43,295 nucleotides of DNA, taken from NCBI RefSeq assembly GCF_001194135.2, contig NC_068982.1, forward strand, positions 15,392,777 through 15,436,071, written 5' to 3'. The notes beneath the pieces were generated by a model. That model did not search any database. It was given only the letters and a program-made list of their open reading frames with translations, and had not been told where the DNA came from. The DNA is from Octopus bimaculoides. Taxonomy: Eukaryota. Position 1 is the stretch's first letter. Each line of letters begins with the position of its first letter. The position numbers were made by a program, and so were the translations under genes. This document shows positions 21,560 through 23,803 of this stretch, piece by piece.

Positions 21560-22066
21560 GGACTTGAAAGGACATTGAAATGGCACGAGCATAAATGAGA
21601 AGGCGTCACTTAAAATCGTGAGTATAAGCTCTTGTGGAATTTTACAATCCATTGTGATTCAGTGATCGATGCTCGGAGACCAGACATTGTTATAATTGAT
21701 AAAATGATTAAGGAAACCAAGATCATAGATATTGCCTTATCTGGGGATGTAGAAGAGGATTGCACGAATGTGGGCAATGAAGAAAGGAACTGTCGTCCTG
21801 GTAGTTATAGGGGCTAAGAAACATTAACGACCGAGTTGAGAAATTTGCTGGAGACATTGAGATTGACATGAGGGTAGATCATGCTCAGAAAACTGCTTTA
21901 TTGGGGGAGAGTGAGAGGACTTTGAGACTGGTACTTGGATGTTAAGTATCGGGGAAAGAGACCCTGTGAGATCATTGACAACAGGTTGTTGTCTGCTAAT
22001 ACAGAATTAGCCGGGTCAAGTAAAATGGAGAGCTTTGAAAAGTGGAAGAAAAATAATAATAATAAT
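21559..22066 (+). mobile_element. 5'-truncated R4/Dong-clade LINE 3' end: restriction-enzyme-like endonuclease (PD-(D/E)xK) plus 3' UTR and (AAT)n tail
   Basis: KWHEHK*EGVT*NREYKLLWNFTIHCDSVIDARRPDIVIIDKMIKETKIIDIALSGD / RMWAMKKGTVVLVVIGA / HAQKTALLGESERTLRLVLGC* (stop at 21943-21945). (AAT)n on both sides. Confidence 0.85.
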
Positions 22067-22083
22067 TTTGCAGAAAAAAGTGT

Positions 22084-22161
22084 TAGCGGCTGGCTATGAG
22101 ACTCGAACTCACACCTCCGTGATTACGCGTCGCGGTGCTCTGAACTATTAAGCTAAACCGC
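22084..22161 (-). pseudogene. tRNA-Thr(CGT)-like pseudo-tRNA (left arm, mirror copy)
   Basis: Reverse complement of 22170-22247 with a few transitions. Confidence 0.6.
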
Positions 22162-22169
22162 TCTCACGA

Positions 22170-22247
22170 GCGGTTTAGCTTAATGGTTTAGAGCACCGCG
22201 ACGCGTAATCACAGAGGTGTGAGTTCGAGTCTCATAGCCGGCCGCCA
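22170..22247 (+). pseudogene. tRNA-Thr(CGT)-like pseudo-tRNA (right arm)
   Basis: TAGCTT-AATGGTTTA-GAGC D arm; anticodon arm CGCGA-CGCGTAA-TCAC(A/G) with CGT; T arm GTGAG-TTCGAGT-CTCAT; then AGCCGGCCGCCA and a T7 run at 22252-22258. The acceptor stem is broken and U33 is replaced by G. Confidence 0.6.
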
Positions 22248-23803
22248 ACACTTTTTTTCCTGTAAAATAGGGGTAGCTTATCCTGTTCAGGCTATATTAT
22301 TAGCATTATCCTGCAACTGAGAATTTAAAATCACTTCTTTAACTTTCTAAGATATCTCAACGCTCCTAAAGCAAACTTTGTTTGTTTGTTTACGTTCATC
22401 GTAATTTGAATTTAATAATAATAATAATAAAAGGGATGTGCTCGACCACGGATTCAGCGTCAATTTTGTAATCTAGGTTTCTTCTAAAATATCAGAAAAT
22501 ATCAGTCGTAAAAAAGGAAACAATATCGATTTAGAGACCTTGATACATTCTCGATAATGATGAAATATTGATGTATATGTGTCAGTACATATATGTAAGC
22601 ATGGTACACACACTCACACTTACACAGTTCCTTCTTGGAATTGGATGCCAAAGCACATATAAAGCTGCATATGATAGCATGTAAAAATTGGCTTGTATGT
22701 ATGTATGTATGTATGTATGGTATAGCATCATTAGTCTGAATTGAATAATTAGTGCATTCAATCCTCCAAAAGCAGGGCGTGGAATATATCAGAATAACAT
22801 AGACTAACTGCTAATTGACATGATATAAATTACACGGGAACAAGTGCTGTTTACAAACATGGATTATTCTTGGTTAAAGCGACGCTGTCAATGCCAATTG
22901 TGTAGGCGCGCTAACCAGGCTGTGACGGCCAAGCCTCACGCTGATTGGTTAAAATACAGTTCGTAGGATACGGCTTGCTGAAGTCTACTGGAATGTGTTA
23001 AAAAAACAAAAAGAACAAATTCAAGCATTCCATTACAGTAATTGTGAAACAACTATCGGTTAATGCTGCTACTATATAAACCTGAAGATTGCGAACAGCA
23101 TAAAAGTACTTCTCTTATCATAATATGTAAACATTGTAAAATTGTAGAAAATACGAAAATAAAACATAAAAACCAGACAATGTTGGAATTTCATTGACAT
23201 ATATATATAACAGCGAAACTGGACCTAATTCCTCGCTACCAATGGAAGAACCCTAAATAACTACGACTACGATTGGAGATAACGTTGATATATTGAAGGG
23301 AGCAAAACACATTAAAGAATCTCCAGAGAGAATATATAAACAACTACATAAACATGACAAAAGAGACATAGACGTCCCATCATCAGCAGTTGTATCAGAA
23401 ACCATTGTGGTTTCGACATTGCGTGTGTATATACATATATGTATGTGTGTGTGTAGGGGTGGGTAGGTATAAGCACCTAAAGGAGGAAATAACAAAATAA
23501 AGATGTGTACATTTACTTTTAACACGTTCCTGCAAAACGCTTTTGGTGCGTGATTTTGTCGGAGAACAAGACACCCCCCTCCACAAAAAAAAAAAAAGAC
23601 AAAATCTTTTCTCCTGAAAATATTGTTGCGATTTTGAAATAAAACTAATATTGAGATGTATATTTCAAAATATATATCTTAATTTTATCTTGAAATGTCT
23701 CTTCTTTTTGGCTGTTCATATAAATGATTATATGATGACTGTAAACACTTCGCTAATCGCTTTTACATTAAATGTATATTTCGTAATAGCAGTGAGGAAT
23801 CGA

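What the first reader, a model, noticed from the sequence alone, without database searches (positions are those of the whole stretch)
22065..22413. Head-to-head double pseudo-tRNA-Thr(CGT) fold-back element
Seen: two tRNA-like units diverge from a 4-nt loop, each followed by an oligo-T run, forming a ~99-bp-arm hairpin; a unique body and (AAT)n follow. This is unlike an ordinary SINE, which has one tRNA head and no Pol III terminator directly after it. Inference: divergent Pol III promoters could yield two short RNAs, while read-through transcripts would form long dsRNA, a potential ADAR or Dicer substrate (relevant given heavy A-to-I editing in coleoids). (AAT)n flanks and adjacency to a Dong 3' end suggest mobilisation in trans by R4/Dong machinery.
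Basis: partly seen in the sequence, partly recalled or inferred. Interest (0 to 1): 0.7.

Follow-up and report, generated by a model that had tools for sequence, protein, structure and literature searches.

The report
SINE copy with snapped-back 5' end
The "double tRNA hairpin" is real, but it is most likely one copy of a short tRNA-headed retroposon whose front end was duplicated in reverse while it was being inserted, a known type of by-product of this kind of insertion rather than a purpose-built two-promoter element.

Summary
Arms 22074-22163 and 22168-22257 are 94% complementary around a 4-nt loop. Each arm carries a degenerate tRNA-Thr(CGT)-like unit (Rfam 32.3 and 30.2 bits, threshold 29) followed by a T6 or T7 run. 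A 155-nt body and an (AAT)n tail follow.

The palindrome is not a family feature. A second copy of the body (30415-30656, minus strand, 92.7% identical) has no tRNA unit. It has its own palindrome of 70-75-nt arms, centred on the base after the tRNA 3' end, and a 10-bp target-site duplication encloses the whole structure. So the two copies have two different axes, and both lie at plausible RNA 5' ends: the Pol III start region and the RNase Z site.

An unrelated family in another organism shows the same architecture twice, next to Dong-like LINE tails. In 249 kb of such loci, the only two short-loop palindromes both lie just upstream of a (TAA)n array.

Best reading: a (TAA)n-tailed tRNA-derived SINE whose cDNA was extended on antisense DNA at integration. 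This matches the "snap-back" 5' junction class described for R2 proteins.

Mobilisation by a Dong/R4-type LINE is plausible but rests only on the tail and target. The dsRNA, ADAR and divergent Pol III ideas remain untested. More genomic copies could not be obtained.

The parts
21559..22045 (+). 5'-truncated 3' end of an RLE-type (Dong/R4-like) LINE: degenerate endonuclease-domain ORF remnant plus about 100 nt of 3' UTR with a GACAAC..GTTGTC hairpin
   Evidence: Translation gives ARRPDIVIIDK...IIDIALSGD...QKTALLGE with frameshifts. Profile search finds 4809 homologues. It aligns to the C-terminus of L001 ORF 11636-13846 (E 1e-12), whose RT is closest to R2 proteins in the PDB (E 4e-27). Its nucleotide sequence (ORF remnant plus 3' UTR) matches L002 at 64% identity; the GACAACAGGTTGTTGTC UTR hairpin is also present in L002 (read).
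22046..22064 (+). (AAT)n: tail of the LINE fragment and upstream target of the SINE copy. It overlaps the left arm by 2-3 nt (AAT/ATTTT).
22065..22087 (-). Outer part of the inverted arm: reverse complement of the first 9 nt of the body, the T6 run (A6 at 22074-22079) and the 8-nt trailer
   Evidence: Alignment of the reverse-complemented left arm to the right arm. It matches copy 2's version of the body start better than copy 1's own right arm does.
22088..22161 (-). Inverted tRNA-Thr(CGT)-like unit (duplicate)
   Evidence: Rfam RF00005 32.3 bits; ARAGORN -ps80 tRNA-Thr(cgt); A and B box motifs
22162..22169 (.). Axis: 2-nt leader (GA/TC) on each side of the 4-nt loop TCAC (22164-22167). It lies 2-4 nt upstream of tRNA position 1, where a Pol III transcript would start.
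   Evidence: the link to the transcription start is inference
22170..22243 (+). tRNA-Thr(CGT)-like head of the SINE copy (the RNA-templated one), including discriminator C at 22243
   Evidence: Rfam 30.2 bits for 22171-22240; ARAGORN -ps80 places it at 22168-22247
22244..22258 (+). Trailer GCCAACAC plus T7 run (22252-22258). It is terminator-like and is also present as T6 in copy 2, so it is a family feature.
22259..22413 (+). tRNA-unrelated body of the SINE
   Evidence: 92.7% identical to 30589-30402; alignment; no similarity to the LINE 3' UTR
22414..22430 (+). (AAT)n 3' tail
30415..30585 (-). Copy 2, direct part: trailer, T6, body and a single AAT, starting at the base after the tRNA discriminator position. 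There is no tRNA unit.
30586..30656 (-). Copy 2, axis base (30586) and inverted arm (30587-30656), the reverse complement of the first ~70 nt of copy 2
   Evidence: Arms 30511-30585 / 30587-30661, 96%, 1 nt between them; 72 nt at 97% in my own scan
30405..30414 (-). Target-site duplication ATATTTCTAA, 3' copy
30657..30666 (-). Target-site duplication ATATTTCTAA, 5' copy. It abuts the outer end of the inverted arm.

Best explanation
The locus is one copy of a (TAA)n-tailed, tRNA-Thr-like-headed SINE. Its layout is head, 8-nt trailer, T run, ~155-nt body, then (AAT)n. It inserted by target-primed reverse transcription into a (TAA)n array, where a Dong/R4-like LINE fragment and another short retroposon also sit.

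The second, inverted tRNA unit is not part of the element's design. The first-strand cDNA ran off the 5' end of the template RNA. It was then extended by about 100 nt using antisense DNA as template. Most simply this template was its own cDNA folded back ('snap-back'). Alternatively it was a second cDNA primed from the other target strand. The extended end was then joined to the upstream (AAT)n, and second-strand synthesis fixed the result as an inverted duplication of the element's 5' end.

The second copy arose the same way from an RNA that began right after the tRNA-like head. That RNA could be a product of RNase Z-type cleavage, or the RT could have stopped at the base of the tRNA fold. 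This is why its axis lies elsewhere.

Shown: the anatomy, the two different axes, the target-site duplication enclosing copy 2's palindrome, and recurrence of the architecture in an unrelated family. Inferred: the enzymatic steps, the identity of the LINE partner, and the nature of the two RNA 5' ends.

Any transcript crossing 22065-22268 would fold into a ~100-bp duplex. That is a side-effect and nothing here shows it was selected for.
For: 1. A second copy of the body lacks the tRNA units. It carries its own palindrome about a different axis: 30511-30585 / 30587-30661 with a 1-nt centre.
2. A perfect 10-bp target-site duplication, ATATTTCTAA, flanks copy 2 including its inverted arm. The arm therefore arose at or before integration.
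3. In both copies the inverted arm is the shorter one and ends exactly at the upstream flank, while the longer arm continues to the tail.
4. The axes fall 2-4 nt upstream of tRNA position 1 in copy 1, and at the base after the discriminator in copy 2. Both are natural RNA ends.
5. Arm divergence is about 6% in copy 1 and 3-4% in copy 2. This is comparable with the 7.3% divergence between the copies, as expected if the arms date from insertion.
6. An unrelated family in another organism has the same architecture twice, with different axes. Both lie between (AAT)n arrays beside Dong-like LINE tails: L001 10801-11247 and L004 4384-4474.
7. In 249 kb of loci around Dong-like LINEs, these are the only two non-low-complexity short-loop palindromes. 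Both lie within the 5.4% of sequence that is 300 nt or less upstream of a (TAA)n array, giving P of about 0.003.
8. At least 10 copies of other SINE families in the window have no such palindrome.
9. R2 proteins, which are RLE LINE enzymes, produce this junction class experimentally. The cDNA 3' end primes synthesis complementary to the cDNA before 5' junction formation, often after full-length cDNA has been made (PMC11371274; PMC11331408).
Against: - Only two copies of the family could be examined, and both have palindromes. A palindromic master with a later symmetric central deletion in copy 2 is therefore not excluded.
- The centres are very tight: 4 nt and 1 nt. That is awkward for a true intramolecular hairpin primer and fits a junction between two cDNAs equally well.
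- A T6-T7 run between head and body should stop Pol III. How an RNA spanning head, body and tail is made remains unexplained.
- Copy 2 sits in a non-microsatellite target with a 10-bp duplication. That pattern looks more like an AP-endonuclease LINE than a (TAA)n-specific RLE LINE. I-clade LINEs also end in (TAA)n (PMC3747384).
- In the comparison family, one copy (L004 4098-4304) lies antisense between two (AAT)n arrays. The L004 palindrome also needs a secondary 40-nt deletion to fit the model.
Confidence: 0.65

Rival explanations
1. Two-cDNA ('twin priming') variant. Both cleaved target strands prime reverse transcription on copies of the same RNA. Both cDNAs run to the RNA 5' end and are joined head to head, giving the palindrome without any hairpin turn.
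For: The centres are very tight: 1 nt in copy 2 and in L004, 4 nt in copy 1. There is possible microhomology between the upstream flank and the antisense sequence at the outer end of the arm: TTCTAA|CG against TTCTCAAA|CG in copy 2, and AAT/ATTTT in copy 1. Antisense-only fragments bounded by (AAT)n arrays, namely X at 21359-21528 and L004 4098-4304, could be products primed from the top strand alone.
Against: Classical L1 twin priming inverts a different, more 5' segment without large duplication. Here 70-100 nt are duplicated, which needs two templates or strand displacement. A (TAA)n 3' end has no complementarity to the priming sites. There is no direct experimental precedent for RLE LINEs in the papers read.
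Confidence: 0.2
2. The head-to-head tRNA pair is the designed 5' end of a fold-back SINE family, with divergent Pol III units and a hairpin RNA. Copy 1 is a 5'-truncated copy of that master and copy 2 is a derivative with the centre deleted.
For: Both available copies are palindromic. Both arms keep A and B box motifs and T-run terminators. Long palindromes are prone to central deletions (established knowledge).
Against: Copy 2 would need a perfectly symmetric ~160-nt deletion whose ends coincide with the tRNA 3' boundary on both sides. An RNA with a stem of 175 bp or more is a poor RT template. The left tRNA unit would be transcribed away from the body, so it cannot drive the element. An unrelated family shows the same variable-axis pattern. 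In contrast, a true family-level palindrome in this window keeps its centre sequence between copies: the telomere-like repeat pair at 38826-38991 and 39890-40010.
Confidence: 0.1
3. Post-insertional DNA rearrangement: a replication fork template switch or fold-back repair at an ordinary SINE copy, unrelated to retrotransposition.
For: Inverted duplications with short spacers are a known product of replication template switching (established knowledge). The arms have diverged, so the event is old in any case.
Against: It would have had to happen independently in 2 of 2 copies of this family and in 0 of at least 10 other SINE copies in the window. Each time the inverted arm would have to end exactly at the insertion boundary or target-site duplication, with axes at RNA-end positions. 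The association with (TAA)n arrays in other genomes is also unexplained.
Confidence: 0.08
4. Assembly artefact in a gapped short-read scaffold.
For: The window has 11 N gaps. Palindromes can confuse de Bruijn assemblers.
Against: An artefactual palindrome would have identical arms. Here the arms differ at 6 substitutions plus an indel in copy 1, and at 2-3 sites in copy 2, each arm having private changes relative to the other copy. The same architecture is seen in long-contig assemblies of other organisms.
Confidence: 0.03

Closest known systems
'Snap-back' 5' junctions of R2-protein-mediated insertions (PRINT experiments; PMC11371274, PMC11331408)
   Same: Reverse-complemented element sequence sits between the upstream target and the element's 5' end. 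It is formed when the cDNA 3' end primes synthesis on the cDNA before junction formation, often after full-length cDNA has been made. The enzyme class is an RLE LINE.
   Different: Those are engineered insertions into human rDNA, scored from reads. Here they are old germline copies of a SINE at (TAA)n or other sites in an invertebrate genome. The enzyme is unknown, and the centres are tighter than a simple hairpin would suggest.
tRNA-derived SINEs with simple-repeat tails
   Same: A tRNA-like head with A and B boxes, an unrelated body, a microsatellite tail, dispersed copies, and a target-site duplication.
   Different: There is a T6-T7 run between head and body. No 3' sequence is shared with the nearby LINE. 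One of the two copies is headless.
Dong / R4-clade LINEs, specific for (TAA)n (PMC3812793). Dong-R4 is among the main recently active LINE groups (most insertions) in Octopus vulgaris (PMC13282606).
   Same: The neighbouring LINE fragment has an RLE-type C-terminal domain and an (AAT)n tail, and lies in a stack of insertions within a (TAA)n array. Homologues elsewhere show the same features.
   Different: Clade placement was not tested phylogenetically. The SINE shares only the tail repeat with it.
L1 5' inversions by twin priming (5'-inverted class; listed in PMC2912911)
   Same: The inverted 5' portion lies inside the target-site duplication and is made at integration.
   Different: Twin priming gives inversion of a different segment with little or no duplication. 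Here the same 70-100 nt are present in both orientations.
Penelope-like elements with an adjacent inverted 5'-truncated copy (PMC8557442)
   Same: Inverted structures are made at insertion, with a bias toward microsatellite targets.
   Different: In PLEs the inverted copy is 5'-truncated and keeps its 3' end or pLTR. Here the inverted arm keeps the 5' end and lacks the 3' end. No hammerhead motif, pLTR or 'tail' extension is present.

Membership tests
tRNA-derived SINE | 5' head related to a tRNA, with internal A and B boxes | tested here: met
   Rfam tRNA 32.3 and 30.2 bits against a gathering score of 29. ARAGORN at the relaxed threshold calls Thr(cgt). A and B box motifs are present.
tRNA-derived SINE | tRNA-unrelated body and simple-repeat or A-rich 3' tail; dispersed copies with target-site duplications | tested here: met
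   Body 22259-13 plus (AAT)n. A second copy is 92.7% identical. A 10-bp target-site duplication flanks copy 2. Genome-wide copy number could not be tested.
tRNA-derived SINE | Head present in copies of the family generally | tested here: inconclusive
   One of two copies lacks the head. No further copies were obtainable.
tRNA-derived SINE | No Pol III terminator between head and tail, so one Pol III transcript can span the element | tested here: not met
   A T7 run (copy 1) or T6 run (copy 2 and the inverted arm) lies directly after the 8-nt trailer.
tRNA-derived SINE | 3' end derived from the partner LINE's 3' end (stringent type) | tested here: not met
   Local alignment of the body against the adjacent LINE 3' end is no better than shuffles, with 131 of 500 shuffles scoring at least as high. 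Only the (AAT)n tail is shared.
Snap-back 5' junction of target-primed reverse transcription | A reverse complement of the insert's own 5' sequence lies between the upstream target and the insert's 5' end | tested here: met
Snap-back 5' junction of target-primed reverse transcription | The inverted segment lies inside the target-site duplication | tested here: met
   Copy 2: ATATTTCTAA at 30405-30414 and 30657-30666. This cannot be scored for copy 1, which sits in a microsatellite target.
Snap-back 5' junction of target-primed reverse transcription | Axis at the cDNA 3' end, hence different in independent insertions | tested here: met
   There are two axes in the window family and two in the L001/L004 family.
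Snap-back 5' junction of target-primed reverse transcription | Made by a LINE reverse transcriptase during integration | not testable with these tools
   This needs a retrotransposition assay.
Dong / R4-clade LINE (neighbouring fragment 21559-22045) | RT followed by a C-terminal restriction-like endonuclease domain | tested here: inconclusive
   Only the C-terminal remnant is present (RRPDIV, IIDIA). It aligns to the C-terminus of an ORF with an R2-like RT. Its homologue P0002 matches the R2 RLE region only weakly, at E 0.15.
Dong / R4-clade LINE (neighbouring fragment 21559-22045) | (TAA)n tail and insertion into (TAA)n arrays | tested here: met
   the definition comes from PMC3812793
Dong / R4-clade LINE (neighbouring fragment 21559-22045) | Groups with Dong/R4 in an RT phylogeny | not tested
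   No reference Dong or R4 sequences were on hand.
Functional tRNA-Thr gene | Canonical cloverleaf recognised by tRNA finders, with an intact anticodon loop | tested here: not met
   ARAGORN at default settings finds none. The Rfam score is borderline, with 13-17 nt unaligned in the anticodon arm and a bulged acceptor stem. The fold is no better than shuffles.
MITE / foldback DNA transposon | Terminal inverted repeats at both ends of the unit inside the target-site duplication | tested here: not met
   Copy 2's ends are CGTAGGATAATGC... and ...GTAATTTGAATTTAAT, which are not inverted repeats of each other. The palindrome lies at one end only.
Penelope-like inverted arrangement | The inverted neighbour is a 5'-truncated copy that keeps the 3' end or pLTR; hammerhead motif | tested here: not met
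   The inverted arm keeps the 5' end and lacks the 3' end. No hammerhead hit appears at E up to 10.
miRNA precursor families (mir-3160, mir-876 and others) | Score at or above the family gathering threshold | tested here: not met
   Scores are 43 against 80 bits and 37.9 against 88 bits. The same kind of generic hairpin hit appears for the L001 and L004 palindromes.

The most novel reading that the evidence does not exclude
Turn-around synthesis at RNA 5' ends may be a frequent, systematic output of (TAA)n-tailed retroposition in marine invertebrates. On this reading it continually seeds 70-220-bp perfect hairpins across these genomes, which are raw material for dsRNA, ADAR editing, endo-siRNAs or new miRNAs. 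The axis positions would also record in vivo RNA ends, including RNase Z cleavage of tRNA-SINE transcripts that yields headless but still mobile RNAs.
Probability: 0.25. Interest if true: 0.55.

Novelty: new member of a known kind. Interest (0 to 1): 0.33.

Why it matters
If the reading is right, this is a natural germline record of a junction type so far described mainly from engineered R2 insertions. It occurs in a genome where Dong-R4 LINEs are among the most active elements. It explains how long, near-perfect hairpins can arise in one step from ordinary SINE RNAs. It also gives a simple sequence signature for counting such events genome-wide: an inverted arm inside the target-site duplication, with its axis at an RNA 5' end. 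For annotation, it warns against defining a 'double-tRNA fold-back' family from single copies.

Tried and rejected
- Exact-pattern scans for more copies found nothing. The body 27-mer and 22-mer and the head 23-mer were run against viral (body 27-mer only), metagenome and prokaryote genome contig collections.
- The protein route to the source genome failed. The ORF through the window's most abundant SINE has no relatives in the protein collection. A window ORF is not on record. The profile search with the RLE domain found 4809 proteins, but none of the 120 listed is labelled as cephalopod.
- A Pfam scan of 10 window ORFs gave only degenerate C2H2 fingers, and no host gene was identified.
- Similarity between the SINE 3' end and the LINE 3' UTR was tested and rejected.
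- MITE, Penelope-like, miRNA and genuine tRNA gene readings were rejected on defining features (see the membership test).
- I tried to orient the L001/L004 comparison family with Rfam and found no small-RNA head. Its sense strand is inferred only from which arm continues to the tail.
- I first thought element X (21359-21528) ended at the 5' end of its parent SINE, which would have supported run-off synthesis primed from the top strand. The alignment shows it ends internally, so I dropped that argument.
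Full report
**1. What is there**

The window is AT-rich, microsatellite-rich eukaryotic DNA with 11 N gaps. It carries many SINE copies. From memory I recognise them as octopus-type repeats, but the species was not established with the tools.

At the reported coordinates there is a 90-nt, 94% complementary inverted repeat, 22074-22163 / 22168-22257, with a 4-nt loop. With one 2-nt indel it extends to 22065-22268. As RNA it folds into one hairpin of -178 kcal/mol, z = -30.

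Each arm contains a tRNA-like unit that passes the Rfam tRNA threshold narrowly, at 32.3 and 30.2 bits against 29. ARAGORN misses both at default settings and calls both tRNA-Thr(cgt) at a relaxed threshold. Neither unit is a good fold on its own.

Both units keep A-box and B-box motifs. Each is followed by an 8-nt trailer and a T6 or T7 run. A 155-nt body and (AAT)n follow.

**2. Surroundings**

The element is the last of three short insertions stacked in one (TAA)n array:
- (AAT)14 at 21317-21358
- a 170-nt fragment X
- (TAA)10 at 21529-21558
- a 487-nt LINE 3' end at 21559-22045
- (AAT)n
- the palindromic element
- (AAT)n

The LINE piece translates, with frameshifts, to ...ARRPDIVIIDK...IIDIALSGD...QKTALLGE.... 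A profile of this domain finds thousands of relatives in invertebrate sequence; the few named ones are from a shrimp and an octocoral. The domain aligns to the C-terminus of an ORF whose RT is closest to R2 proteins among solved structures, at E 4e-27 against 1e-13 for L1 ORF2p. It matches the R2 endonuclease region weakly.

Related LINEs fetched from other assemblies also end in ~100 nt of UTR plus (AAT)n and are stacked in (TAA)n arrays. Dong elements are the documented (TAA)n-specific LINEs, including one in a snail (PMC3812793). Dong-R4 is among the main recently active LINE groups, with the most insertions, in Octopus vulgaris (PMC13282606). So 'Dong-like' is reasonable, although clade placement was not tested.

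The SINE body shares nothing with this LINE's UTR beyond the tail repeat.

**3. The second copy changes the reading**

BLAST of the element against the window finds one more copy of the body on the minus strand, 92.7% identical. Read in its own orientation it is:
- flank ATATTTCTAA
- a 70-nt inverted arm
- a single C
- GCCAACAC-T6-body-GAATTTAAT
- ATATTTCTAA again

It has no tRNA unit at all. It is nevertheless a palindrome, with arms of 72-75 nt at 96-97%. Its axis is the base that corresponds to the tRNA discriminator position of copy 1.

The 10-bp target-site duplication, at 30405-30414 and 30657-30666, encloses the inverted arm. The palindrome is therefore not a conserved part of the family. 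Each copy has its own, about a different axis, and in each the shorter arm stops at the upstream flank while the longer arm runs on to the tail.

The axes are not arbitrary. One lies 2-4 nt upstream of tRNA position 1, where Pol III would start. The other lies where RNase Z would cut, or where an RT would meet the base of the tRNA fold. These assignments are inference.

**4. The same architecture elsewhere**

I fetched 13 loci (249 kb) around homologues of the LINE domain. I scanned them for non-low-complexity palindromes with loops of 12 nt or less and arms of 20 nt or more. Only two exist.

- L001 10801-11247: 220-nt arms at 99% identity with a 7-nt loop. It sits directly after a Dong-like LINE's (AAT)n. 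Its right arm continues through ~40 unique nt into an (ATA)n array.
- L004 4384-4474: 45-nt arms with a 1-nt centre. It lies between two (AAT)n arrays.

Both belong to one family that is unrelated in sequence to the window's SINE. Their axes lie at different positions of that family, about 1 and about 172. Both fall in the 5.4% of sequence that is 300 nt or less upstream of a (TAA)n array.

There are caveats. The L004 case needs a secondary 40-nt deletion between GTCTTG repeats. A third copy of that family lies antisense between two (AAT)n arrays. The family's sense strand is inferred, not shown.

Within the window, six copies of one abundant SINE family and four or five of another have no such palindrome.

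**5. Mechanism**

The pattern has three features: an inverted copy of the insert's own 5' end inside the target-site duplication, a variable axis, and a variable arm length. This matches the 'snap-back' class of 5' junctions reported for R2-protein-mediated insertions. In that class the cDNA 3' end primes further synthesis complementary to the cDNA before joining to the upstream target, often after full-length cDNA has been made (PMC11371274; PMC11331408).

I therefore read the left tRNA unit as about 100 nt of turn-around synthesis on antisense DNA after the cDNA reached the RNA 5' end. I read copy 2 as the same event on a headless RNA.

The very tight centres of 4 nt and 1 nt leave a variant open, in which two cDNAs primed from the two target strands are joined head to head. 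I cannot separate the two variants with two copies.

Arm divergence is about 6% and 3-4%, all six substitutions in copy 1 being transitions, two at CpG. This is of the same order as the 7.3% divergence between copies. That fits arms made at insertion, and it rules out an assembly artefact.

**6. What remains unexplained**

- The T6-T7 run between head and body is a family feature and should terminate Pol III. How an RNA spanning head, body and (UAA)n is produced is open: read-through, Pol II or intronic transcription are candidates.
- Copy 2's 10-bp duplication at a non-microsatellite site is not what a strictly (TAA)n-specific enzyme would give. Another (TAA)n-tailed LINE, for example of the I clade, could be the partner.

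**7. Verdict**

The interpretation as a purpose-built double-tRNA fold-back element is not supported, while mobilisation by (TAA)n-type LINE machinery is plausible. The object is a new member of a known kind: a tRNA-derived SINE copy with a snap-back-type 5' junction.

The functional ideas (divergent Pol III units, dsRNA, ADAR or Dicer) were not testable. The hairpin would form in any read-through RNA, but nothing indicates selection for it.

Interest is modest at 0.33. The more interesting, unproven possibility is that such turn-around junctions are a regular product of (TAA)n-tailed retroposition and a steady source of long hairpins.

Noticed in passing
window 38826-38991 and 39729-40116 (centre 39890-40010): There are two copies of a repeat whose core is a palindrome of telomere-like repeats, (TTAGGG-like)n facing (CCCTAA-like)n. 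The centre GGG-AATTCCGT-CCC is conserved in both copies, in opposite orientation, and they share the flanking sequence GTGAAAATCGTGCGGGTGTTA. Here the palindrome is a family feature, unlike in the tRNA SINE.
   Followed up: partly
window 39207-39322 (-): A 5S rRNA-like sequence scores 56.1 bits against a gathering score of 38. It lies between the two telomere-repeat palindromes and could be a 5S pseudogene or a 5S-derived SINE head.
   Followed up: no
window 21359-21528; also 10248-10289, 18756-18893, 25973-26039, 35845-35980: Element X is a 170-nt internal fragment of an abundant tRNA-related SINE. It lies antisense between (AAT)14 and (TAA)10. A second antisense fragment abuts the (ATT)n array at 10220-10250. 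The other three are ordinary sense copies. Antisense fragments bounded by (TAA)n arrays recur in L004 4098-4304 and are not explained by simple TPRT.
   Followed up: partly
L001 10801-11286 and L004 4098-4479: A short repeat family in an unidentified organism (ENA ERZ25066843 contigs) forms palindromes with 220-nt and 45-nt arms next to Dong-like LINE tails. The right arm of the L004 palindrome carries a 40-nt deletion between GTCTTG direct repeats.
   Followed up: partly
window 37687-38147: A tandem array of a 27-bp unit (ATAAACATTGAGGTAAACTTTGAATTG) has about 15 copies at 95-97% identity and is split by a 49-N gap.
   Followed up: no
window 3422-3791 (+): A degenerate ORF carries three C2H2 zinc fingers spread over two reading frames (Pfam zf-C2H2_4, E 1e-6). 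It may be the N-terminal DNA-binding region of an RLE-type LINE rather than a host gene.
   Followed up: no
window 2783-3144, 20300-20760, 24764-25134, 28449-28773, 29133-29331, 42906-43225: Six copies of one abundant, older SINE family are 64-70% identical to each other. A long stop-free reading frame runs through its antisense strand, and this ORF has no relatives in the protein collection.
   Followed up: partly
window 21945-22045 and L002 1140-1245: The 3' UTRs of the Dong-like LINEs in the window and in a Tara Oceans contig share a conserved hairpin motif, GACAACAGGTTGTTGTC, about 60 nt before the (AAT)n tail. It is a candidate RT recognition element, and the SINE lacks it.
   Followed up: no
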